This document shows positions 138 through 31,144 of a DNA stretch of 39,150 nt, in pieces (position 1 is the first letter of the stretch; each line of letters begins with the position of its first letter). The notes beneath the pieces are model-generated. The model was not told the origin of the DNA, ran no database searches, and saw only the letters and a list, made by a program, of their open reading frames with translations. The DNA comes from Octopus bimaculoides (Eukaryota). The stretch covers positions 15,536,519-15,575,668 of the forward strand of contig NC_068992.1 in the NCBI RefSeq assembly GCF_001194135.2, in the 5' to 3' direction. A program made the translations under genes and the position numbers.

Positions 138-1289
138 TGCATATAAAACTCACACACACGAATATATATACATATAAGTATGTATGTATGTAGTTTATTG
201 GCGTGTTGTCCTACAGAAGACCTCAATACACTGAATTATGGAAGGTGTATCTGATTGTAAAAAATTTGTGTTATAATATCCATGTATTTCGTTGAGCACT
301 TCAAAATTTAGTCTGATCGCAGTTACGTCTTCCAAGAGGCTGATGTGTGTAGTCAGCCAATCATGGCCTCTCTACAGAATTATGGTTTTGTTATTCAATT
401 ATCCATAATCACAGACACAAACTCTCTTAATTCGTTTGTTTCTTTCTTCATAAATTTCTTACTTCCTTCAATATTTCTGAGTGTTACAAAATTTATTAGC
501 GCTACGTATACATAGTAAGTAAAAGACATTTTCACACCACCGCAAATAACTAGGCTGCCATTTTAATATAGTCATTTCCCTCATCAAAATAATCATTACT
601 AATTTACACAATTACTTCTTCGTCATTATCATCTTTTTCTTCACTGTCGTCGCAATTTTTAATTTCGCGCATGCGCATGAAGACATAATGTTGAAGACGA
701 GTATTATACATCTTCAAAATTTATTTTTCTTTCTTCGCATTACGTTCCAATTCGTGTTTCTTCTAAATTGGTTCCTTAGTTTCCTTTGATACAACAGCTT
801 TCTGCATTTCATCTGTTTATATTAAATCGACTGTAGTGTATGTTCTAATCCAAAGGTCGACAATCCTACCCAGCTTTATTCAAGGTGTTTCCCATACGGG
901 TGGATGGAGTGAACTGAAGCTGCAAGTATTAAGTATAAGTTTCTAAAATATATTCTTGGTGAAGGATTATAAAAGATTAGGGCAAAAGACGATGGAAATA
1001 ATATTGAATTATGATAGGTCCATAGTCCTGGTTTCATTTAATCTTTGAATAACTTCTTCAGACACCAAGGAAACAGATTACTATATTACGCTTAGTAGTA
1101 GAAAACCCCTTTAATAAGTCAGGATATTTTAACATCACTGACCGCTCGTACTAAAAATTATATAATATAATTTTAATTAAATTGACAGATTTAGAAAATT
1201 GAAACAAATGAGATAATAGTTTTCTTTGGGCAACTTGACTTATCCATAACAAGAGAATATTATAATACTCTTTCTGTGTTCCATCTTCA

Positions 1290-4127: not shown

Positions 4128-4918
4128 AACATGGTGTATACCTATCTATAACTGAACTATTATGAACTTTTCACATTCCGGACGCTTTCTGATTTGCTTT
4201 TATACATATTTTTATAAAAAGCTTGCATTTCTCTTCATTATGTTATATAGATTTAAGTAGGTTATAAATTGATTTATTGACGTGGTACCTCTTGATTGCG
4301 TGATTGACACTTTATGAGTTTCTTCCAGTGTTTATTCATATATATATGGATTCATATATATANNNNNNNNNNNNNNNNNNNNNNNNNNNNNNNNNNNNNN
4401 NNNNNNNNNNNNNNNNNNNNNNNNNNNNNNNNNNNNNNNNNNNNNNNNNNNNNNNNNNNNNNNNNNNNNNNNNNNNNNNNNNNNNNNNNNNNNNNNNNNN
4501 NNNNNNNNNNNNNNNNNNNNNNNNNNNNNNNNNNNNNNNNNNNNNNNNNNNNNNNNNNNNNNNNNNNNNNNNNNNNNNNNNNNNNNNNNNNNNNNNNNNN
4601 NNNNNNNNNNNNNNNNNNNNNNNNNNNNNNNNNNNNNNNNNNNNNNNNNNNNNNNNNNNNNNNNNNNNNNNNNNNNNNNNNNNNNNNNNNNNNNNNNNNN
4701 NNNNNNNNNNNNNNNNNNNNNNNNNNNNNNNNNNNNNNNNNNNNNNNNNNNNNNNNNNNNNNNNNNNNNNNNNNNNNNNNNNNNNNNNNNNNNNNNNNNN
4801 NNNNNNNNNNNNNNNNNNNNNNNNNNNNNNNNNNNNNNNNNNNNNNNNNNNNNNNNNNNNNNNNNNNNNNNNNNNNNNNNNNNNNNNNGCAATAAAGAAA
4901 CATATAACTTGACATAAA

Positions 4919-6801: not shown

Positions 6802-7491
6802 CTAGGTTGAGGAAACAGTTCGTGTGCTGTATTAAAATAATGATTTTTTATGTAAGAATTTATTCAACAACTATTCTTCAAAATAAAGACCATCATTTTC
6901 CACGACCTTCTGCCAATGATCTGCAAGCTTTCAGATTTGGTCAAAGTACCAATCCTTCGGATTTGATTTGAAAAATTCTTGACAAGCTTCTACTTCATTG
7001 AATGACTCAAATTTATTCAAAAACAACAGCTATTCTTCAAAATTAAGACCATCATTTTCTGCGACCTTCTGCCAACGATCTGCAAGCTTTCGGATTTGGT
7101 CAAAGTACCAATCCTTCGGCTTTGAATCGAAATATTCTTGACAGGCTTCTTCTACTTCATCGAATGACTCAAATCGGTGATCTTTCAAAAAGTGCTGCAT
7201 TTTTCATAAGAGACCGTAGTCAGATGGAGCAACGTCTGGACTATAGGCTGGATGCAGCAGAACTTCCACAGCATCCAATTCTTCAATCTTGTTGCTGGTA
7301 TTTCTGGCGGTATGCAGCTTTGCATTGTCTTGTTGAAACAAAGCGCGTTTTCGACGAACGAGTCTTGGGTATTTTCCAACAGTGACTCCCCATTGAACAT
7401 GACATGAACTGAATGAACACACACACCACAAAATATATTTTTAAAAAAGGCATTATTTTAACACAGCGCACGAAATTTTTCCTCGACCTAA
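6802..7491 (-). mobile_element. Internally deleted mariner (Tc1/mariner) DNA transposon
   Basis: About 50-bp TIRs (TA|CTAGGTTGAGGAAACAGTTCGTGTGCTGTATTAAAATAATG and CATTATTTTAACACAGCGCACGAAATTTTTCCTCGACCTAA|TA) with a TA target duplication; encloses the transposase C-terminus. Confidence 0.9.
7030..7365 (-). pseudogene. Mariner transposase C-terminal remnant
   Basis: KYPRLVRRKRALFQQDNAKLHTA...HPAYSPDVAPSDYGLL*KMQHFL...QIRKLADRWQKVAENDGLNFEE*; contains the diagnostic YSPDLAPSD-like motif and an in-frame premature stop. Confidence 0.92.
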
Positions 7492-7889: not shown

Positions 7890-8720
7890 ATAGCAAGGTT
7901 GTTGGTGGGGGGATGCGTGGTGGTGGGGATGCGTGGTGGTGGCGGGGANNNNNNNNNNNNNNNNNNNNNNNNNNNNNNNNNNNNNNNNNNNNNNNNNNNN
8001 NNNNNNNNNNNNNNNNNNNNNNNNNNNNNNNNNNNNNNNNNNNNNNNNNNNNNNNNNNNNNNNNNNNNNNNNNNNNNNNNNNNNNNNNNNNNNNNNNNNN
8101 NNNNNNNNNNNNNNNNNNNNNNNNNNNNNNNNNNNNNNNNNNNNNNNNNNNNNNNNNNNNNNNNNNNNNNNNNNNNNNNNNNNNNNNNNNNNNNNNNNNN
8201 NNNNNNNNNNNNNNNNNNNNNNNNNNNNNNNNNNNNNNNNNNNNNNNNNNNNNNNNNNNNNNNNNNNNNNNNNNNNNNNNNNNNNNNNNNNNNNNNNNNG
8301 CGTGGTGATGGTGGTGTTGGTGGTGGTGGTTGTGGTGGTCGTTGTTTTTGTTGTTTCTTGTTTTTGTTGGCTTTATTGTATTTCCTGTCGTTGTTGTTGC
8401 TTTCTGTGTTTTTTGTTGCTGTCTTGTTGTTATTGTTGTTGATATTCTTGATGTTACTGTTTTATTTTAGCTGTTCCTGCTTTTTTGTTTTTTTTTTGTC
8501 GTTATTGTTGGTTTGTTTTGTTGTTGTCATTATTTCTTTTGCTATTGTTGTGATTTTTGTTGCTGTTGTTGCTAAATGCTGTTTGTTACCAACAAACGCA
8601 GGATCGGAAAACGGTTAAGAACACCCACCTATTACAAAAACAACAACAACAACAACAACAACTAAGAAGTGCTCCACCGCAACAACAACAACAACAACAG
8701 CATCAACAACAGGACAAACA
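7890..8720. repeat. (GGT)n/(GTT)n/(CAA)n trinucleotide tracts around a gap
   Basis: Direct inspection; source of the poly-V/L and poly-Q pseudo-ORFs. Confidence 0.85.
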
Positions 8721-10827: not shown

Positions 10828-11639
10828 ACTTTTTGTTTGTAGATCAATAATGTAAACATTAACAATGATACCAATTTAATGTTCGCGTGTTTTGAAACTC
10901 TTGTAGCTGCGGTATTTCGTCTTAGGGAGGCCTCCTTTAAAGACATATAGTGTATACCCCCAAAGATACGTGAACCTACACCAACGCCGGAAATGAACGA
11001 GAATGGCATATATCGATATTTTGCAGTATTTTCTGCTCAACAGTGTCATATACTCGCTTGACCTCCGAAACTGTTGTAAAGCGGTCTTTTGCCACTGTTG
11101 TATGTCTTTTGACGACCGTTGTCGCTCTGACAAATATTATTATATTCCGAAGTCGTCGATAGAATGGTTCTATCTGGCACTGTACGACCCGCGGTCGTAG
11201 TGTTATTATCCTCAAAAGGTTGGATCATTATAACGTCCACTCAATAGTACAATATAATTACTATATCAGCACAGACACGACTATCAACACAGTCTACACG
11301 TACTCTCGATCTTCTGACCTTCTTTCTGTCGACCGGCTTTTGATCTATTTATAATGGCTGGTTACTACCACTTTTTACCGAGTGGGGTGTACAGTTTCGC
11401 TATACGTCTCCCCTTTTCATTTTTTATTTAACAATCAATTTCTTTTATTCACCCTACCTCCTCCTTNNNNNNNNNNNNNNNNNNNNNNNNNNNNNNNNNN
11501 NNNNNNNNNNNNNNNNNNNNNNNNNNNNNNNNNNNNNNNATATATATATATATATATATACTCAATATCTTTTCTTCATGGGGCCTACTTTTAGGAATTC
11601 AGTGTTATTCCTTTTCCTTGTACGTGTGGTTTCGACTTC

Positions 11640-14211: not shown

Positions 14212-15669
14212 TCTATAATACATAAACCCNNNNNNNNNNNNNNNNGTGTAAAAGACGGCCGTATTTTTCAATTGCTTGCGCTGAAATTTTGCACAGTGAG
14301 TGCACCAGTTAAATTTCATAACTGAATCGTTAGTTTCAAAGTGAAATTGGGCGATCAATCAACTGAGTGAATGTTTTCTCACAACAAAATTCAATTGGCA
14401 GTAGAAGCAACAAATTGATTGATAGTTGAACGTGGAAATTTGGGTGGCAAATATCTAAAACTTTAGCTAACAGTTTCTTATACAAAACACAAAATGAGTG
14501 GGGTTTTTCAACTTTTGCGTGACTCGCTTGATTTGACAAGTACATGCCCATTGTGTATTCTTTAATTCCATTTCATGAAGAACGAATATTAGTATCAACA
14601 TTTCCAATGATGAATTATTTTTTATCAGTAATCATAATTCATAATTGAACGATTTTTTGGCAAATTCTTATCATTTTTACGAATTTTACAGATCAAAGTT
14701 ATCGGTTACATTCTAAAAAAAAAACGCACACTTCGGTCGGTTCCGATAGATTATTAATCCACATTGCTACTTTATCGGTCAACATCACATATTGCCGAAC
14801 CCTATATTCCATTTAAAGTCTTCTGGTTACGTAGACTTAAATAATCTTATTTATAAAGAATTTTCATCACTTCCAAATTAATATAAGGTAATTTTAATGC
14901 TAACATCCTTTTTTTCCCAAAGGAAGCTCGGTTTTGGCTGTCTTTCATTTTCAGAGAAACTGTTTCGATTGGCACATTCTTTTTATTTAAACTTCGAACT
15001 TACGTGGGATATTTCTTCGAAACACCCTTTACCTTCTGCTACCTGTCAGTGCACTGGTGTTTGCATCGCTCGTTTACATTTTATCACAATTGCACTGTTG
15101 GTCGATAGAATATCGATTTTCTCGAAGTACGTTCTGTCCACACAAGCTTATAGATGTGAATGCTCATTCACAACTGTCCGCATCCACGTGCGATTTGGTG
15201 CTTACAATACAATTACAAATAATTGTGCGCTTTAGCGTTGTGGGAATTTTTTGTGTTAAAATATTATATTTAGTGCTTGCAAACAGCAACGAGGTAAATT
15301 TAATTGATTTTTTTTAAAGATTCATTCAATTACAGATTTTCGATAGAATGTTTCGAAAAAGCAAGGCTCACATTGACAGAAAAACAACAACAAAATGCTT
15401 CCGTTTTGCGTTCCTTGCGGGCAAACGCGAGAGAAGAACAATGTGTGCATCGGTGTGTTCGTAATGCTGCTTCTAATTCAAGCACCAGAACATCGCAGAC
15501 AGCTCAACAAGCAGAACTCCGGCGTGCTCGCAATCCTGCTTCTAATTCGATCGCCAGAGCATCACAGACAGAAACATAGATAGAGGCGGAACTACACACT
15601 GTAATTGATTCCAGTCCTATCACGAACTTACACTGTAAGCATAACTGGGGGATGGGGGACGTTTGCTAG
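14212..15669 (+). mobile_element. Non-autonomous Helitron with both termini
   Basis: 5' A|TCTATAATACATAAA followed by a short gap (likely microsatellite) and a ...gctgaaattttgcacag subterminal tract; 3' GC-rich degenerate tract then TTTGCTAG|T; lies between host A and T. Confidence 0.65.
15340..15600 (+). pseudogene. Helitron RepHel N-terminal-like remnant
   Basis: RLTLTEKQQQNASVLRSLRANAREEQ...RNAASNSSTRTSQTAQQAELRRARNPASNSIARASQTET: repeated R/A/E-rich helical units like those at Helitron ORF N-termini; lies inside the Helitron termini. Confidence 0.5.
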
Positions 15670-15823: not shown

Positions 15824-16542
15824 AAACAAAGAAAGTCCAAAGAAGGGAAAAACGGAGGAAGAAAATATCGCCACCGATATCCACGAGGTTACACATATAT
15901 ATATATATATATATCAACATATATACATATATCTATCTATCTATCTATCTACTGACTTGGGATTCATATTTACCATAAAGTTTGAGGTCATCCATGAATA
16001 ACAAGTGGTTGGCTTTTTGTTGGCGGTTTTTGAATACAAACCCAGCCTTCTTTGCTTTCCTCATAATCAGTGTTAGTGGTATCATGCACAATACAAAGAC
16101 CAGTGGGGACAGGCAGTCTCCTTGGAAGATGCTCCTCCTGATTTCTATTGTCCTTAAACCTCTTCCATATGCTGACAGTTCCGCCCTCCACTTTGCTCAA
16201 CATTTGATGTAATACAAAATAGGTTCATACATTCCATATTCCAAGAATGTGGGATCATATCGTACGTCTTACGATAATCGATCCATGACATGGCTAAATT
16301 AGTTTTTTTTTCCTCTTGCAGTCTCTAAGTACAGTTTTGTCTACCAGGAGTTGATCCTTGGTACCTCTGTAGTTACGCTTGCAACCCTTCTTCTCATGTG
16401 GCAGGACTCTATTTTTTCCAGATGTCCGTACATTGACTCTACGACTATTCCAGTCAATAATTTCCACTTTATTATTATTATTATTATTATTACTATTACT
16501 ACTATTATTATTATTATTACTATTACTATTATTATTATTATT

Positions 16543-17804: not shown

Positions 17805-18670
17805 TTTGTCACTGGACTGCGACCATACTGGGGCACGTCCTTGAAGAGTTTTAGTCGAACAAATCAACTCCGGTACTTATTCTAGTTTTGTCATTTGCTA
17901 AATCGCTTAGTTATGGTGACGTAAACAAACCAACAAAGGTTGTCAAGCAGTGGTGGGGAGGCAATACTTTCTCACTCACACATACATATATACATTCTTG
18001 TGTGTATGTGTGGATGTACGNNNNNNNNNNNNNNNNNNNNNNNNNNNNNNNNNNNNNNNNNNNNNNNNNNNNNNNNNNNNNNNNNNNNNNNNNNNNNNNN
18101 NNNNNNNNNNNNNNNNNNNNNNNNNNNNNNNNNNNNNNNNNNNNNNNNNNNNNNNNNNNNNNNNNNNNNNNNNNNNNNNNNNNNNNNNNNNNNNNNNNNN
18201 NNNNNNNNNNNNNNNNNNNNNNNNNNNNNNNNNNNNNNNNNNNNNNNNNNNNNNNNNNNNNNNNNNNNNNNNNNNNNNNNNNNNNNNNNNNNNNNNNNNN
18301 NNNNNNNNNNNNNNNNNNNNNNNNNNNNNNNNNNNNNNNNNNNNNNNNNNNNNNNNNNNNNNNNNNNNNNNNNNNNNNNNNNNNNNNNNNNNNNNNNNNN
18401 NNNNNNNNNNNNNNNNNNNNNNNNNNNNNNNNNNNNNNNNNNNNNNNNNNNNNNNNNNNNNNNNNNNNNNNNNNNNNNNNNNNNNNNNNNNNNNNATATA
18501 TATATATATACACAGATAAGACGTGCTTCTTTCAGTTTCCGTCTACCAAATCCACTCACAATCAATCTCACAATGCTTTAGTCGGCCCGAGACTATAGTA
18601 GAAGAGTCACACAGTGGGACTGAACCCGGAACCATGTGACTAGGAAACAAACTTCTTATCACACAGCCTC
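17805..18670 (-). mobile_element. SINE family A spanning a gap
   Basis: Tail (ttagtcgaacaaatcaac...ggttgtcaagcagtggtgg) left of the gap; head (ttcagtttccgtctaccaaatccactcaca...gggactgaacccggaaccatgtg) right of it. Confidence 0.8.
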
Positions 18671-20796: not shown

Positions 20797-21005
20797 AATT
20801 TGGTTTCAAATTTGGGCACAAGGTTAGAAATTTCGGAGTAGGAGTTAAGACGATTACATTGACCCCACTATTCGATTATATCGATCTCAGTACTCGACCC
20901 CCGAAAGATGAACGGTAAAGCTGACTTTGGTGGAATTTGAACTCAGAACCTAAAGACAAACGAAATGTCGATAAGCATTTTGCCCGGTGCTCTATCGATT
21001 CTGCC
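20797..21005 (-). mobile_element. SINE family B, diverged
   Basis: cgacccccgaaagatgaacggtaaagctgactttggtggaatttgaactcagaac...gcattttgcccggtgc. Confidence 0.8.
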
Positions 21006-21126
21006 AGGTTTCCTACATATTTGAAAAAAGGATGTGATGGTGAACGCTGGAAGGCCTCCGGTCATAAGGTTTCCAACATATTTGAAAAAAGGATGTGATG
21101 GTCAACACTGGAAGGATTCTGGTCAT
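21006..21126. repeat. Two-copy tandem duplication of about 62 bp
   Basis: aggtttcctacatatttgaaaaaggatgtgatggtgaacgctggaaggcctccggtcat, then aggtttccaacatatttgaaaaaaggatgtgatggtcaacactggaaggattctggtcat. Confidence 0.9.
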
Positions 21127-21359
21127 ATTTCTGCTTCATATTTCTTTATAAGTACAGAACAATCAACTGTCATTCACAAGCATATGTATGACTTACTAAC
21201 TTGTACCATGCTTTCGATAATTGTTTTAGGTGCCCGTATAGTCACAAGCAAACATTTACAAGCTCCCCGCCATCCCAACATTGAACCAACAGAATATCCT
21301 TTCTCTTGTGACAGTTGTGGAGGGCGGTGGGACCGAGGGTTGAACCAGCTTTTTTAAAT

Positions 21360-21500
21360 TACTCATTTCCAGCTGAACAGACTAGAGTGCCTTGAAAAAA
21401 AATATTCTAATCAAGGACAAAACGTGCTATCCGGGTCCAGGAATTGAACCCACCACCTTATGGTCATGAGCTGAACACGTCTAATCACTAGGTCACGTAC
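21360..21500 (-). mobile_element. tRNA-derived SINE head (third family)
   Basis: Minus strand cgtgacctagtgattagacgtgttcagctcatgacc...gtgggttcaattcctggacc: A-box- and B-box-like motifs, then ttgtccttga. Confidence 0.55.
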
Positions 21501-21810
21501 CTTCACTATCATTTTAATACAAATGTTCCTTTCTATTATAGACACTAGGCCTGAAAATTTTGCGGTAAAGTATTCAAGTATGTCTAAAAAACAGATTTCT
21601 TCCTTCACAATGACATTTGACGATTTCTAGGGATATCATGTTATAGGCATATAATTTGCAGATTTTGTGTTCTAGATTCTGTATCAATAGAATAGACCGA
21701 TCCTAGGTCATCTTTTGTATTTTCTTTATCATGGGCAAAAAATATCCCCGTTTCTGGCCGAAATCTTACTACAATTAAACTACCTATACACAAAATTAAG
21801 CAATGGAGCA

Positions 21811-21862
21811 GTACTACTGATGAGCTTTGATTTCAAGCGAAATTGGCTTGCCAGTTTAGTAC
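21811..21862 (+). ncRNA. Complete type I hammerhead ribozyme
   Basis: GTACTA-CTGATGA-GCTT-tgatttc-AAGC-GAAA-TTGG-cttg-CCAG-T-T-TAGTAC: intact CUGANGA/GAAA/UH core, 6-bp helix I, 4-bp helix II, 5-bp helix III (A-U, U.G, U-A, G-C, G-C). Confidence 0.85.
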
Positions 21863-23245
21863 CCTCACTCGCTATGGGGCGATTAACTCCCCTGTCGGTA
21901 CATTGGCTTGTGCTATGGTTTCTGGCTATAAGGGTCTTTAATTCTTATTTCTAGCGATGTAGGGGTTACAATGCAGCATCAGTCACAATTAGTGACAATT
22001 GAATTCTTCTTGTTTGGTTTTATATTGCGTCTCGCCACCTTTATCATTTTATGCACAAAATTATATACGTTCATAATTTTATTATACTTTACTTAAGGGA
22101 AAGTTGATAATGAAGCATTTTTCACACTTTGGCCAACTTCTCCATAGCTAGATCAGGACAACACCAATCAAAATTACATTTCTTGTGAAAAATCAAGGTA
22201 GTGTGTATACCAATATCTTGACTTGGTTTCTTAACCCATTACCTCCCATAATTCTATTAACTGGAATTTTTTATGAAACTTTGATTTTTAGCATAAAACA
22301 GCCCTAGAAACACGCTGGAATGATCAAAATAACATTTCAAAATAACGTTTTAAATAGAAATAACCAAGATATTGGGTGAAAAATTAGCAAACCTAATTTG
22401 AATATCAGAGAAATATACCTAGTAGATATAGAAAAGAAGTTAGATGTGTGTAAATATTGACAGATAATTACGAAATTTGTAATTTTTAAGTGATCCCATA
22501 TGGATTCAGCTCGAAAAAAGGTCCAGGAAACATGTCTATTCAGCAGGAGCCTTTCCGTTTCCAAATTCTGCAAGCTTGTGTTATAGAGAGAACATGAAAT
22601 GCTATTTATGGTGGTGCTTCAGGATGGTCTTCACCGTGATGGTTAAAACAAATATGCACGTCATCAGATCCCAGAAAATATCCAAACCCGGATACAATAT
22701 AATGCCTTTCACGCCCACACCTCTTCTTAGGGGCTTTAGGTGCAAGTGTTTGGCGGTGGAGGGGGATAAGCTTATATTATACCTCCGTGCTGGAACTGAA
22801 TCGTTTCCAGTGTTGGTTAATGTGAGAAGAAAAGTGATGAGAGAGAGAGAGAAGAAGAAGAAGAAGAAGAAGAGTGAAATATTGAGAGGGGGAGGCAGAG
22901 GTGATGCGGAAGAACAGTCAGAGATTAATGTAATATCTTGTCATTTCCTATAATGTGTGTGTATGCATGTGTGTTTTTTCATATGTATATGCTTTGGTAG
23001 AAACGTATATGTGTGCATACGTGTATATGTATGCTTGTGTGTGTGTGTCTGATTATTTGGTTGCCTGTGTGTGTGTGTGTGTGTGTGTGTGATCGTATGT
23101 GTAGAAGATTGGGAAGCACGATCAAATTGTTTCATTAATGGGACCGGAGAGGTTTCTAACGCATTACATGCCTCATTTCAGAGAATTAAGGCTAACAGAC
23201 CTGATCGAATCAGCATTTACAACTTTACCATTCCTCATTCATCCG

Positions 23246-24369: not shown

Positions 24370-24520
24370 GAAGGTGGTGAGCTGGATGAATCGTTAGCAC
24401 ACCAGTCAAAATGCTTAGTGGAATTTCATTCCATCTTCATATTCTGAATTCAAATTCTGCCAAGGTTGACTTTGCATCCCATATTTTAGGGGTCGATAAA
24501 ATATATACCAATTGAGCACT
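24370..24520 (+). mobile_element. SINE family B, 5' part, truncated by the next insertion
   Basis: aaggtggtgagctggatgaatcgttagcacac...aggggtcgataaaat. Confidence 0.8.
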
Positions 24521-24800: not shown

Positions 24801-25744
24801 NNNNNNNNNNNNNNNNNNNNNNNNNNNNNNNNNNNNNNNNNNNNNNNNNNNNNNNNNNNNNNNNNNNNNNNNNNNNNNNNNNNNNNNNNNNNNNNNNNNN
24901 NNNNNNNNNNNNNNNNNNNNNNNNNNNNNNNNNNNNNNNNNNNNNNNNNNNNNNNNNNNNNNNNNNNNNNNNNNNNNNNNNNNNNNNNNNNNNNNNNNNN
25001 NNNNNNNNNNNNNNNNNNNNNNNNNNNNNNNNNNNNNNNNNNNNNNNNNNNNNNNNNNNNNNNNNNNNNNNNNNNNNNNNNNNNNNNNNNNNNNNNNNNN
25101 NNNNNNNNNNNNNNNNNNNNNNNNNNNNNNNNNNNNNNNNNNNNNNNNNNNNNNNNNNNNNNNNNNNNNNNNNNNNNNNNNNNNNNNNNNNNNNNNNNNN
25201 NNNNNNNNNNNNNNNNNNNNNNNNNNNNNNNNNNNNNNNNNNNNNNNNNNNNNNNNNNNNNNNNNNNNNNNNNNNNNNNNNNNNNNNNNNNNNNNNNNNN
25301 NNNNNNNNNNNNNNNNNNNNNNNNNNNNNNNNNNNNNNNNNNNNNNNNNNNNNNNNNNNNNNNNNNNNNNNNNNNNNNNNNNNNNNNNNNNNNNNNNNNN
25401 NNNNNNNNNNNNNNNNNNNNNNNNNNNNNNNNNNNNNNNNNNNNNNNNNNNNNNNNNNNNNNNNNNNNNNNNNNNNNNNNNNNNNNNNNNNNNNNNNNNN
25501 NNNNNNNNNNNNNNNNNNNNNNNNNNNNNNNNNNNNNNNNNNNNNNNNNNNNNNNNNNNNNNNNNNNNNNNNNNNNNNNNGGCCAGTGTAAATGGAGTAA
25601 TTAGAAAGAAAGAAAAAAAAAACAGTGAAATCAATCAAAATTGTTGTCATGAAATTCAGAGAATGCATCGTTCTTATTTCTCATTCGTAAGTTTACTGGG
25701 GACTTCAATGCTTTTTATTATTCGCGTGTTTTATAATCTTTTCT

Positions 25745-27284: not shown

Positions 27285-27652
27285 NNNNNNNNNNNNNNNN
27301 NNNNNNNNNNNNNNNNNNNNNNNNNNNNNNNNNNNNNNNNNNNNNNNNNNNNNNNNNNNNNNNNNNNNNNNNNNNNNNNNNNNNNNNNNNNNNNNNNNNN
27401 NNNNNNNNNNNNNNNNNNNNNNNNNNNNNNNNNNNNNNNNNNNNNNNNNNNNNNNNNNNNNNNNNNNNNNNNNNNNNNNNNNNNNNNNNNNNNNNNNNNN
27501 NNNNNNNNNNNNNNNNNNNNNNNNNNNNNNNNNNNNNNNNNNNNNNNNNNNNNNNNNNNNNNNNNNNNNNNNNNNNNNNNNNNNNNNNNNNNNNNNNNNN
27601 NNNNNNNNNNNNNNNNNNNNNNNNNNNNNNNNNNNNNNNNNNNNNNNNNNNN

Positions 27653-30482: not shown

Positions 30483-31144
30483 ATCTTTTTTAAAACGGGG
30501 GCCACATTTTTCATTAACGAAACACTTTGAAACTTGGAACACTGGTAGAATGTGTCATATAAAACATCTTTTTCTCTTAGTCTTCTTAAAAAAAAAAGAA
30601 ATCCCNNNNNNNNNNNNNNNNNNNNNNNNNNNNNNNNNNNNNNNNNNNNNNNNNNNNNNNNNNNNNNNNNNNNNNNNNNNNNNNNNNNNNNNNNNNNNNN
30701 NNNNNNNNNNNNNNNNNNNNNNNNNNNNNNNNNNNNNNNNNNNNNNNNNNNNNNNNNNNNNNNNNNNNNNNNNNNNNNNNNNNNNNNNNNNNNNNNNNNN
30801 NNNNNNNNNNNNNNNNNNNNNNNNNNNNNNNNNNNNNNNNNNNNNNNNNNNNNNNNNNNNNNNNNNNNNNNNNNNNNNNNNNNNNNNNNNNNNNNNNNNN
30901 NNNNNNNNNNNNNNNNNNNNNNNNNNNNNNNNNNNNNNNNNNNNNNNNNNNNNNNNNNNNNNNNNNNNNNNNNNNNNNNNNNNNNNNNNNNNNNNNNNNN
31001 NNNNNNNNNNNNNNNNNNNNNNNNNNNNNNNNNNNNNNNNNNNNNNNNNNNNNNNNNNNNNNNNNNNNNNNNNNNNNNNNNNNNNNNNNNNNNNNNNNNN
31101 NNNNNNNNNNNNNNNNNNNNNNNNNNNNNNNNNNNNNNNNNNNA

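What the first reader, a model, noticed from the sequence alone, without database searches (positions are those of the whole stretch)
21811..21862. Structurally complete type I hammerhead ribozyme in unannotated non-coding DNA
Seen: helix I GTACTA(21811-16)/TAGTAC(21857-62); core CUGAUGA(21817-23); helix II GCUU/AAGC closing a 7-nt loop; GAAA(21839-42); helix III closed by a CUUG loop; U16.1 at 21855 and H17 at U21856 (GUU triplet). Helix I can extend past a small internal loop (GAG 21806-08 with CTC 21864-66), as in natural type I hammerheads where that loop docks with loop II. Established: type I hammerheads occur in Penelope-like elements and in small non-coding retrozymes that make circular RNAs in several invertebrates, including a mollusc. 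Inference: this is a self-cleaving RNA of a retrozyme-like family, or a domesticated intronic ribozyme. It differs from the usual GAAAC/GUC form by two C-to-T changes, so it may be slower or ageing. No ORF or known repeat in the window explains it.
Basis: partly seen in the sequence, partly recalled or inferred. Interest (0 to 1): 0.9.

Follow-up and report, generated by a model that had tools for sequence, protein, structure and literature searches.

The report
Lone hammerhead ribozyme motif, invertebrate DNA
A complete, textbook-shaped hammerhead self-cutting RNA motif really is present at 21806-21866 and is too good to be a likely accident. It stands alone in transposon-rich non-coding DNA, so it is best read as one more ordinary, unproven member of a ribozyme class already known to be common in animal genomes.

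Summary
Positions 21811-21862 (+) spell a type I hammerhead: helix I of 6 bp, CUGAUGA, helix II of 4 bp with a 7-nt loop, GAAA, helix III of 5 bp with a CUUG loop, then U16.1 and U17. Helix I has a distal GAG/CUC extension.

It passes the published filters (Perreault 2011 criteria; de la Peña's CUGANGA/GAAAY/RUH). It scores 8 on Perreault's RNAMotif type I descriptor, which accepts scores up to 10. In 3.8e10 random strand-positions with the window's composition, nothing scored 9 or better. That is under about 6e-6 per window and under 0.5 per 2.7-Gb genome.

Nothing beyond the motif could be shown:
- There is no Rfam match at gathering score; the best is RAGATH-1-hammerhead at 16.6 bits.
- There is no second copy or tandem repeat in 39 kb.
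- No homologue was found in any reachable database.
- The classical loop-loop contact sequences are absent.
- It carries two rare variants (U15.2•G16.2 and U17).
- A competing hairpin is 9 kcal/mol more stable, but an active mussel hammerhead shows a similar gap.

The most likely reading is a stranded single copy of a hammerhead-bearing retroelement. Retrozyme membership is not met locally, and domestication is untested.

The parts
21806..21808 (+). Distal part of helix I, 5' strand (GAG). It pairs with CTC 21864-66.
21809..21810 (+). Internal loop of helix I, 5' side (CA), opposite C21863. This is the position where natural type I hammerheads carry the loop that docks with loop 2.
   Evidence: The geometry (6 bp, then a loop) is the same as in the active coral and mussel controls.
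21811..21816 (+). Helix I, 5' strand GUACUA (positions 2.6-2.1).
21817..21823 (+). Catalytic core C3-A9, CUGAUGA. G5 is 21819 and G8 is 21822.
21824..21838 (+). Helix II, GCUU/AAGC (G10.1-C11.1 present), closing the 7-nt loop 2, UGAUUUC (21828-34).
21839..21842 (+). Core G12 A13 A14 A15.1 (GAAA).
21842..21855 (+). Helix III, 5 bp: A15.1-U16.1, U15.2.G16.2 wobble, U-A, G-C, G-C. It is capped by the CUUG loop 21847-50.
21856..21856 (+). U17. The predicted self-cleavage is 3' of this base, between 21856 and 21857.
   Evidence: Position. Cleavage chemistry is inferred from the established hammerhead mechanism.
21857..21866 (+). Helix I, 3' strand UAGUAC (1.1-1.6), then bulged C21863, then distal CUC 21864-66.
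21785..21798 (+). TATACACAAAATTA. This is the left copy of a 13/14 direct repeat that, with 22050-63, brackets a 251-nt stretch. It could be a target-site duplication, but the signal is weak.
   Evidence: Between 6 and 8% of window positions have such a bracket, so it is not significant.
22050..22063 (+). TATGCACAAAATTA, the right copy of the same direct repeat.
21799..22049 (+). Possible inserted unit carrying the hammerhead at its 5' end. Its GC is 0.42, against 0.31-0.33 in the flanks.
   Evidence: It does not fold better than shuffled sequence (z -0.99).
21715..21954 (+). A 79-aa open frame running over the motif. It is judged spurious.
   Evidence: It has no homologue in 5.8 billion or 1.84 billion protein sets.

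Best explanation
This is a genuine hammerhead ribozyme sequence of type I topology, descended from an evolved hammerhead rather than arising by accident. It most likely sits here as a stranded single ('monomer') copy left by a hammerhead-carrying retroelement of the non-LTR retrozyme / Penelope-like lineage.

The inferred mechanism runs as follows:
1. The + strand is transcribed, for example as part of a longer read-through or intronic RNA.
2. Positions 21806-21866 fold into the three-helix junction.
3. G12 (21839) and G8 (21822) act as general base and acid.
4. The 2'-OH of U21856 attacks its own 3' phosphate.
5. The chain breaks between 21856 and 21857, leaving a 2',3'-cyclic phosphate and a 5'-OH.

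Cleavage is expected to be slower than for a GAAAC/GUC hammerhead, for three reasons: the U15.2.G16.2 wobble, U17, and a competing extended hairpin. With only one ribozyme at the locus, no unit-length RNA or circle can be released. The copy would therefore be a dead end for mobility. At most it would cut whatever transcript runs through it.

Shown here: the motif, its completeness and its improbability by chance. Inferred: transcription, cleavage and origin from a mobile element.
For: - The motif is complete and unique in the window.
- It passes Perreault 2011's three false-positive filters and the CUGANGA/GAAAY/RUH perfect-helix rule of Cervera & de la Peña 2020.
- It scores 8 on the published RNAMotif type I descriptor, which accepts scores up to 10. 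Random sequence gave 0 hits at <=9 in 3.76e10 strand-positions.
- G10.1-C11.1 is present. Only about 9% of chance hits have it.
- Both loops are compact. Only about 5% of chance hits have this.
- The architecture matches experimentally active coral and mussel type I hammerheads: helix I of 6 bp then an internal loop, and helix II of 4 bp with a 5-7 nt loop.
- The energy gap to the competing fold is 8.8 kcal/mol, similar to the 7.4 of the active mussel ribozyme.
- GUU is an accepted active NUH site.
- Invertebrate type I hammerheads typically have a stable helix III and cut as monomers.
- Solo monomer derivatives of retrozymes are documented, with the monomer fraction ranging from 0 to 1 between families.
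- The setting is transposon-rich non-coding DNA.
- There is a weak TSD-like bracket and a GC step around a 251-nt unit.
Against: - There is no Rfam hammerhead match at gathering score. Only RAGATH-1-hammerhead appears, at 16.6 bits against a gathering score of 56.3. Hammerhead_1, HH9 and HH10 are not listed at E<=10.
- There is no second copy, tandem repeat or decayed copy in 39 kb.
- No related sequence was found in the protein or metagenome collections.
- U15.2.G16.2 and U17 are both rare in natural hammerheads (my knowledge of the family).
- Loop 2 (UGAUUUC) and the helix I loop lack the classical contact sequences seen in the HH9 consensus.
- The nearest-neighbour ensemble gives the hammerhead fold a probability of 1.5e-7.
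- The putative 251-nt unit is not unusually structured.
- The TSD-like repeat is not significant.
- Helix III (5 bp with a non-palindromic CUUG loop) is unlike the retrozyme and PLE hammerheads used as controls.
Confidence: 0.5

Rival explanations
1. It is a chance motif. An AT-rich, hairpin-prone stretch happens to satisfy the very small hammerhead consensus. It might even cut weakly in vitro, but it has no evolutionary history as a ribozyme.
For: - The hammerhead consensus is tiny, and the literature warns that database hits include many false positives.
- Under loose criteria, about 38 to 450 chance motifs are expected per 2.7-Gb genome.
- There is no homologue, no Rfam hit and no repeat context.
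- The two positions next to the cleavage site carry the rare variants.
- The sequence prefers a 21-bp hairpin at -20.6 kcal/mol, against -11.3 for the hammerhead fold.
Against: - With the published scoring fixed in advance, random sequence produced nothing as good in 3.76e10 strand-positions. That is under about 0.5 per genome and under 6e-6 per window.
- The strict class with compact loops also gave 0 hits.
- G10.1-C11.1, the compact loops and the 6-bp/4-bp geometry are features of real type I hammerheads and are each uncommon among chance hits.
Confidence: 0.22
2. It is a domesticated, single-copy host ribozyme, for example in an intron or a long non-coding RNA. It would cut a host transcript in cis to control processing or stability, as proposed for the amniote HH9/HH10 and rodent Clec2 hammerheads.
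For: - It is single-copy in 39 kb, not in a tandem array, and has a stable monomer-type helix III.
- All 18 pairs are intact, and both unusual bases are of the tolerated kind.
- There is precedent for domesticated type I hammerheads.
Against: - No exon or gene was recognised in the window. The surroundings are SINEs, mariner, LINE and Helitron fragments.
- There is no similarity to HH9 or HH10.
- No orthologue could be retrieved, so conservation is untested.
- The weak-activity variants at 15.2 and 17 are not what selection for cleavage would favour.
Confidence: 0.13
3. The functional unit, if there is one, is the extended hairpin (21806-21866). It would be a pre-miRNA-like or transposon-derived stem-loop, and the hammerhead reading would be incidental.
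For: The MFE is a near-continuous hairpin at -20.6 kcal/mol, and it is also the centroid structure.
Against: - The z-score is only -1.9, and 9 of 200 shuffles fold as well.
- Three of the pairs are G.U, so it is not a DNA-level inverted repeat.
- There is no Rfam miRNA or other family match.
- Active natural hammerheads show similar competing folds.
Confidence: 0.04

Closest known systems
Type I hammerheads of invertebrate non-LTR retrozymes (Acropora Amil224, Mytilus Mg353; Cervera & de la Peña 2020, PMC7229834)
   Same: - Same topology and identical CUGAUGA...GAAA core.
- Helix I of 6 bp followed by an internal loop.
- Helix II of 4 bp with G10.1-C11.1 and a small loop.
- Low-GC setting.
- Like the mussel ribozyme, it lacks the classical loop-loop contact bases and has a large gap to the MFE fold.
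   Different: - Helix III is 5 bp with a non-palindromic CUUG loop, against 2-3 bp with palindromic tetraloops.
- GAAAU/GUU instead of GAAAC/GUC.
- No tandem repeat and no second copy in 39 kb.
- The flanking unit is not strongly self-paired.
Schistosoma Sm-alpha SINE-like element hammerhead
   Same: It is a type I hammerhead with a stable, multi-base-pair helix III that can act as a monomer, carried by a short non-autonomous element.
   Different: - No pol III-type head lies upstream on the same strand. The nearby tRNA-like SINE head is on the opposite strand.
- There is no sequence match to Rfam Hammerhead_1.
Amniote intronic hammerheads HH9/HH10 (Rfam RF02275, RF02277)
   Same: Type I, single-copy, with a 6-bp helix I plus a loop and a 4-bp GCUN/NAGC helix II. 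The HH9 consensus is shown.
   Different: - Loop 2 is UGAUUUC rather than CAAAAA.
- The helix I loop has no UAC motifs.
- There is no CM match at E<=10.
- The host is an invertebrate, and no intron context is shown.
Penelope-like element / Terminon minimal hammerheads
   Same: Type I topology, and occurrence in invertebrate retroelement-rich DNA.
   Different: PLE hammerheads are minimal variants lacking helix III and sit in pseudo-LTRs next to an RT/GIY-YIG ORF. Here helix III is 5 bp and no such ORF adjoins.
RAGATH-1 hammerhead (RF03152)
   Same: It is the only Rfam model that aligns end to end: type I with a long helix III.
   Different: The score is 16.6 bits against a gathering score of 56.3. 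The 5' accessory hairpin is missing. That family comes from metagenomes and phage-like contexts.

Membership tests
Hammerhead ribozyme (class) | Invariant core C3 U4 G5 A6 N7 G8 A9 ... G12 A13 A14 A15.1 ... U16.1 H17 | tested here: met
   CUGAUGA 21817-23, GAAA 21839-42, U21855, U21856.
Hammerhead ribozyme (class) | Standard pairs directly next to the core in all three stems (1.1-2.1, 10.1-11.1, 15.1-16.1), with no multiple mispairs in short stems | tested here: met
   U21857-A21816, G21824-C21838 and A21842-U21855. All 15 pairs plus 3 distal pairs form, with one G.U.
Hammerhead ribozyme (class) | Accepted by a published structure descriptor (Perreault 2011 RNAMotif type I; accepted scores 3-10) | tested here: met
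   The score is 8. Random sequence gave 0 hits at <=9 in 3.76e10 strand-positions.
Hammerhead ribozyme (class) | Match to an Rfam hammerhead covariance model at gathering score | tested here: not met
   There are 0 hits at gathering score. The best is RAGATH-1-hammerhead at 16.6 bits, E 2.3. Other apparently genuine hammerheads from metagenomes also scored below gathering, at 25-44 bits, so this test is strict.
Hammerhead ribozyme (class) | Conservation or covariation of the three helices in homologues | tested here: inconclusive
   No homologue could be retrieved. The source genome is not searchable with these tools.
Hammerhead ribozyme (class) | Site-specific Mg2+-dependent self-cleavage | not testable with these tools
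   This needs in vitro transcription. The predicted cut is at 21856/21857.
Classical metazoan type I hammerhead (Schistosoma / newt / HH9 type) | Conserved loop 1 - loop 2 tertiary contact nucleotides | tested here: not met
   The HH9 consensus has loop 2 CAAAAA and UAC loops in helix I. The candidate has UGAUUUC and CA/C. The active mussel hammerhead also lacks them, so this does not argue against activity.
Metazoan non-LTR retrozyme | Tandem repeats of about 150-450 bp, each carrying a type I hammerhead | tested here: not met
   There is no direct repeat of the region and no second motif, exact or decayed, within 39 kb.
Metazoan non-LTR retrozyme | Unit RNA predicted to be stable and highly self-paired | tested here: not met
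   For 21799-22049 the z-score is -0.99, and 33 of 200 shuffles fold as well.
Metazoan non-LTR retrozyme | Multi-copy family in the genome, expressed as linear and circular RNA | not testable with these tools
   Neither the genome nor transcriptomes are available here.
Penelope-like element hammerhead | Minimal hammerhead without helix III, inside a pseudo-LTR next to an RT/GIY-YIG ORF | tested here: not met
   Helix III is 5 bp. The nearest RT fragment is 5.5 kb away on the other strand, and no GIY-YIG was seen.
Amniote intronic HH9/HH10 | Sequence and structure match to RF02275 or RF02277, located in a conserved intron | tested here: not met
   Neither model is listed at E<=10 on 271 nt. No exon was recognised in the window.

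The most novel reading that the evidence does not exclude
A single-copy, monomer-competent type I hammerhead that is conserved in cephalopods and cuts a host transcript in cis. It would be a domesticated ribozyme in a mollusc, independent of the amniote HH9/HH10 cases. The U15.2.G16.2 / U17 variants and the competing hairpin would then act as a built-in brake or switch on cleavage.
Probability: 0.1. Interest if true: 0.6.

Novelty: new member of a known kind. Interest (0 to 1): 0.33.

Why it matters
If it cleaves, it adds a hammerhead with a stable helix III and an unusual GAAAU/GUU junction from a lineage (probably cephalopod) for which I found no hammerhead report in the searched literature. 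It would be a handle for asking whether that genome carries a retrozyme-like family or a domesticated ribozyme. On present evidence it is one unvalidated instance of a class already known from tens of thousands of animal copies. Its value lies mainly as a candidate for a cheap cleavage assay and a genome-wide copy search.

Tried and rejected
1. Rfam at gathering score and at E<=10 gave no usable family assignment.

2. I looked for other copies in the window with blastn word 7, the repeat finder, a relaxed or one-mismatch descriptor, and Smith-Waterman against both flanks. Nothing rose above chance. A 14-mer resembling helix II at 22279 is at chance level.

3. I tried to reach orthologues through spurious ORFs:
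- exact look-up of the 79-aa ORF;
- a word-indexed search of that ORF;
- a full HMMER search of the 87-aa frame (one irrelevant weak hit);
- a 652-aa chimera of all open frames from 21414 to 22950.
All were empty. This used all three protein searches.

4. Two metagenome pattern scans were run. The first found nothing. The second found three unrelated microbial or viroid-like hammerheads that merely share the GCUU/AAGC helix II.

5. I first took the 9 kcal/mol competing hairpin as evidence against activity. I rejected that after the active mussel hammerhead showed a 7.4 kcal/mol gap.

6. I considered the 14-nt direct repeats at 21785 and 22050 as a target-site duplication. I demoted this because 6-8% of window positions have an equivalent bracket.

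7. The unit 21799-22049 as a retrozyme-like structured RNA was rejected on its z-score of -0.99.

8. Organism identification rests only on a Helitron helicase fragment. Its best hit is Octopus bimaculoides at 73% identity, followed by a mantis shrimp at 69%. It is therefore tentative.

Full report
**Observation.**
- On the + strand, GUACUA (21811-16) pairs with UAGUAC (21857-62).
- CUGAUGA occupies 21817-23.
- GCUU (21824-27) pairs with AAGC (21835-38) around the loop UGAUUUC.
- GAAA occupies 21839-42.
- Helix III is A-U, U.G, U-A, G-C, G-C (21842-46 with 21855-51), closed by CUUG.
- U16.1 is 21855 and U17 is 21856.
- GAG 21806-08 pairs with CUC 21864-66 across a CA/C internal loop.

My own descriptor scan of both strands finds this site and no other. 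That holds at I>=4, II>=3, III>=3 and with one core mismatch allowed.

**Is it more than chance?** I simulated hammerhead cores embedded in first-order Markov sequence with the window's composition (4.3e10 strand-positions).

| Criterion | Expected per 39-kb window | Expected per 2.7-Gb genome |
|---|---|---|
| Relaxed descriptor | 6.6e-3 | about 450 |
| At least 15 pairs in total | 5.5e-4 | about 38 |
| I>=6, II>=4, III>=5 | 6e-5 | about 4 |
| Same, with both loops <=10 nt | 0 hits seen | 0 hits seen |

To avoid tailoring the thresholds after the fact, I took the annotated RNAMotif type I descriptor and scoring of Perreault et al. 2011.
- The candidate scores 8 on a scale where 3 is best and 10 is the worst accepted.
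- Random sequence gave two hits at score 10 and none at 9 or better in 3.76e10 strand-positions.
- That corresponds to under about 6e-6 per window and under about 0.5 per octopus-sized genome.

Real genomes are not Markov chains. The literature explicitly warns of false positives for this tiny motif. Chance is therefore reduced, not excluded.

**Published filters.** The candidate passes all three false-positive criteria of Perreault 2011: an intact core, pairs adjacent to the core, and no multiple mispairs. It also passes the CUGANGA / GAAAY / RUH perfect-helix rule used by Cervera & de la Peña. GUU is listed among active NUH sites.

**Rfam.**
- There is nothing at gathering score.
- On 271 nt at E<=10, only RAGATH-1-hammerhead appears, at 16.6 bits against a gathering score of 56.3.
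- Hammerhead_1, HH9 and HH10 are not listed at all.

As a yardstick, three hammerheads pulled from metagenomes by a shared helix II scored 25-44 bits. Those scores are also mostly below gathering. The models are strict, but the candidate is clearly not close to any curated family.

**Folding.**
- The nearest-neighbour energy of the hammerhead secondary structure is -11.3 kcal/mol.
- The MFE is -20.6 kcal/mol, an extended hairpin that swallows the core.
- I first read this as evidence against activity. I then extracted two experimentally active type I hammerheads from the supplement of PMC7229834 as controls.
- The gap between the hammerhead fold and the MFE is 3.6 kcal/mol for the coral ribozyme, 7.4 for the mussel ribozyme and 8.8 for the candidate.
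- The competing fold therefore does not disqualify the candidate.
- A hypothetical C15.2/C17 version would have a gap of only 4.1 kcal/mol. The two unusual bases thus both weaken the ribozyme fold and strengthen the hairpin.

**Architecture.**
- Helix I of 6 bp then an internal loop, and helix II of 4 bp with G10.1-C11.1 and a small loop, are exactly what the coral and mussel controls show.
- Helix III differs. The candidate has 5 bp with a non-palindromic CUUG loop, where the controls have 2-3 bp with palindromic tetraloops.
- Loop 2 (UGAUUUC) and the helix I loop do not resemble the classical contact sequences visible in the HH9 consensus.
- The active mussel ribozyme also lacks those sequences.

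**Context.** The window is a draft animal genome.
- It has eight N gaps, abundant microsatellites and about 32% GC.
- It carries tRNA-like SINEs.
- It carries a mariner-type DDE fragment, a reverse-transcriptase fragment and a Helitron PIF1 helicase fragment.
- The helicase fragment's best hit is Octopus bimaculoides at 73% identity, then a mantis shrimp at 69%. The host is an invertebrate, probably a cephalopod, but this is tentative.
- No host exon was recognised.
- A 79-aa frame runs over the motif but has no homologue anywhere.

**Is it a retrozyme?** The defining features are tandem 150-450 bp repeats each with a hammerhead, many copies, and a highly self-paired unit RNA.
- Locally none is met. 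There is no repeat of the region, and no second or decayed motif within 39 kb.
- A 13/14 direct repeat (21785-98 and 22050-63) brackets a 251-nt stretch whose GC is 0.42, against 0.31-0.33 in the flanks.
- That would fit a target-site duplication around a monomer insertion. However, 6-8% of window positions have an equivalent bracket, and the unit does not fold better than shuffles.
- Solo monomer derivatives of retrozymes are documented.
- Penelope-like hammerheads lack helix III and sit next to RT/GIY-YIG ORFs. That does not fit this site.

**Comparative evidence.** I could not obtain any.
- The source genome is not in the DNA collections.
- Four protein-space attempts to catch spurious ORFs from orthologous or paralogous copies were empty.
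- Two metagenome pattern scans gave nothing related.
- I found no report of hammerheads in cephalopods in the searchable literature.

**Verdict.** The motif is real, complete and improbable by chance.

| Reading | Probability |
|---|---|
| Stranded single copy of a hammerhead-bearing retroelement, probably able to cut itself slowly at 21856/21857 if transcribed | about 0.5 |
| Chance motif | about 0.2 |
| Domesticated host ribozyme | about 0.1 |

Membership of the hammerhead class is met on sequence and structure criteria, but it is untested on activity and conservation. Membership of the retrozyme, PLE and HH9/HH10 families is not met. The finding is a new candidate member of a well-known kind and is of modest interest.

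Noticed in passing
L005 (metagenome contig Ga0247550_100195, 1399 nt): 1198-1256 (+) and 176-251 (-): A type III hammerhead (44 bits, just under the gathering score of 48.5) lies on one strand. A Hairpin-meta1 ribozyme (59.8 bits, above the gathering score of 40) lies on the other strand of the same short contig. This is the signature of a viroid-like circular RNA replicon with ribozymes of both polarities. It is unrelated to the window.
   Followed up: partly
L003 (metagenome contig Ga0187893_10200748): 89-116, 395-464 and 825-912, all (-): Three hammerhead-like sites sit on one strand of a 1.5-kb contig. Two are sub-threshold RAGATH-1-hammerhead matches at about 25 bits. The third is the pattern match, which appears to have a GUU cleavage triplet like the candidate. 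This may be a multi-hammerhead array.
   Followed up: no
window 21400-21510 (-): A tRNA-like SINE head lies on the minus strand, about 300 nt from the hammerhead. It has a B-box-like GGTTCAATTCC (first base at 21450) and a CAT anticodon-like loop. ARAGORN does not call it a tRNA. It is on the opposite strand, so it is not a promoter for the ribozyme.
   Followed up: partly
window 21006-21127 (+): A 61-nt unit is duplicated in tandem at 90% identity, next to a SINE tail (family D5).
   Followed up: no
window 20894-21007 and 24382-24496: Two SINE-like copies in inverted orientation, 71-76% complementary and about 3.4 kb apart, enclose the hammerhead region (pairs I2 and I4).
   Followed up: no
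window 7033-7440 (-), 15948-16324 (-), 36574-37405 (+): Three decayed transposon coding fragments are present: mariner/Tc1-type DDE_3, a reverse transcriptase (RVT_1) and a Helitron-type PIF1 helicase with a 2B domain. The helicase's best hit is Octopus bimaculoides at 73% identity.
   Followed up: partly
window 21842-21850 and 21902-21910 (+): The 9-mer ATTGGCTTG, which forms the 5' half of helix III plus its loop, recurs 60 nt downstream. Its significance is unknown, and it is probably chance.
   Followed up: no
window 4363-4888, 7949-8299, 11467-11539, 14230-14245, 18021-18495, 24801-25580, 27285-27652, 30606-31143: Eight assembly gaps (runs of N, 3127 bases in all) are present, several of them next to microsatellites. 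A repeat copy hidden in a gap cannot be excluded.
   Followed up: no
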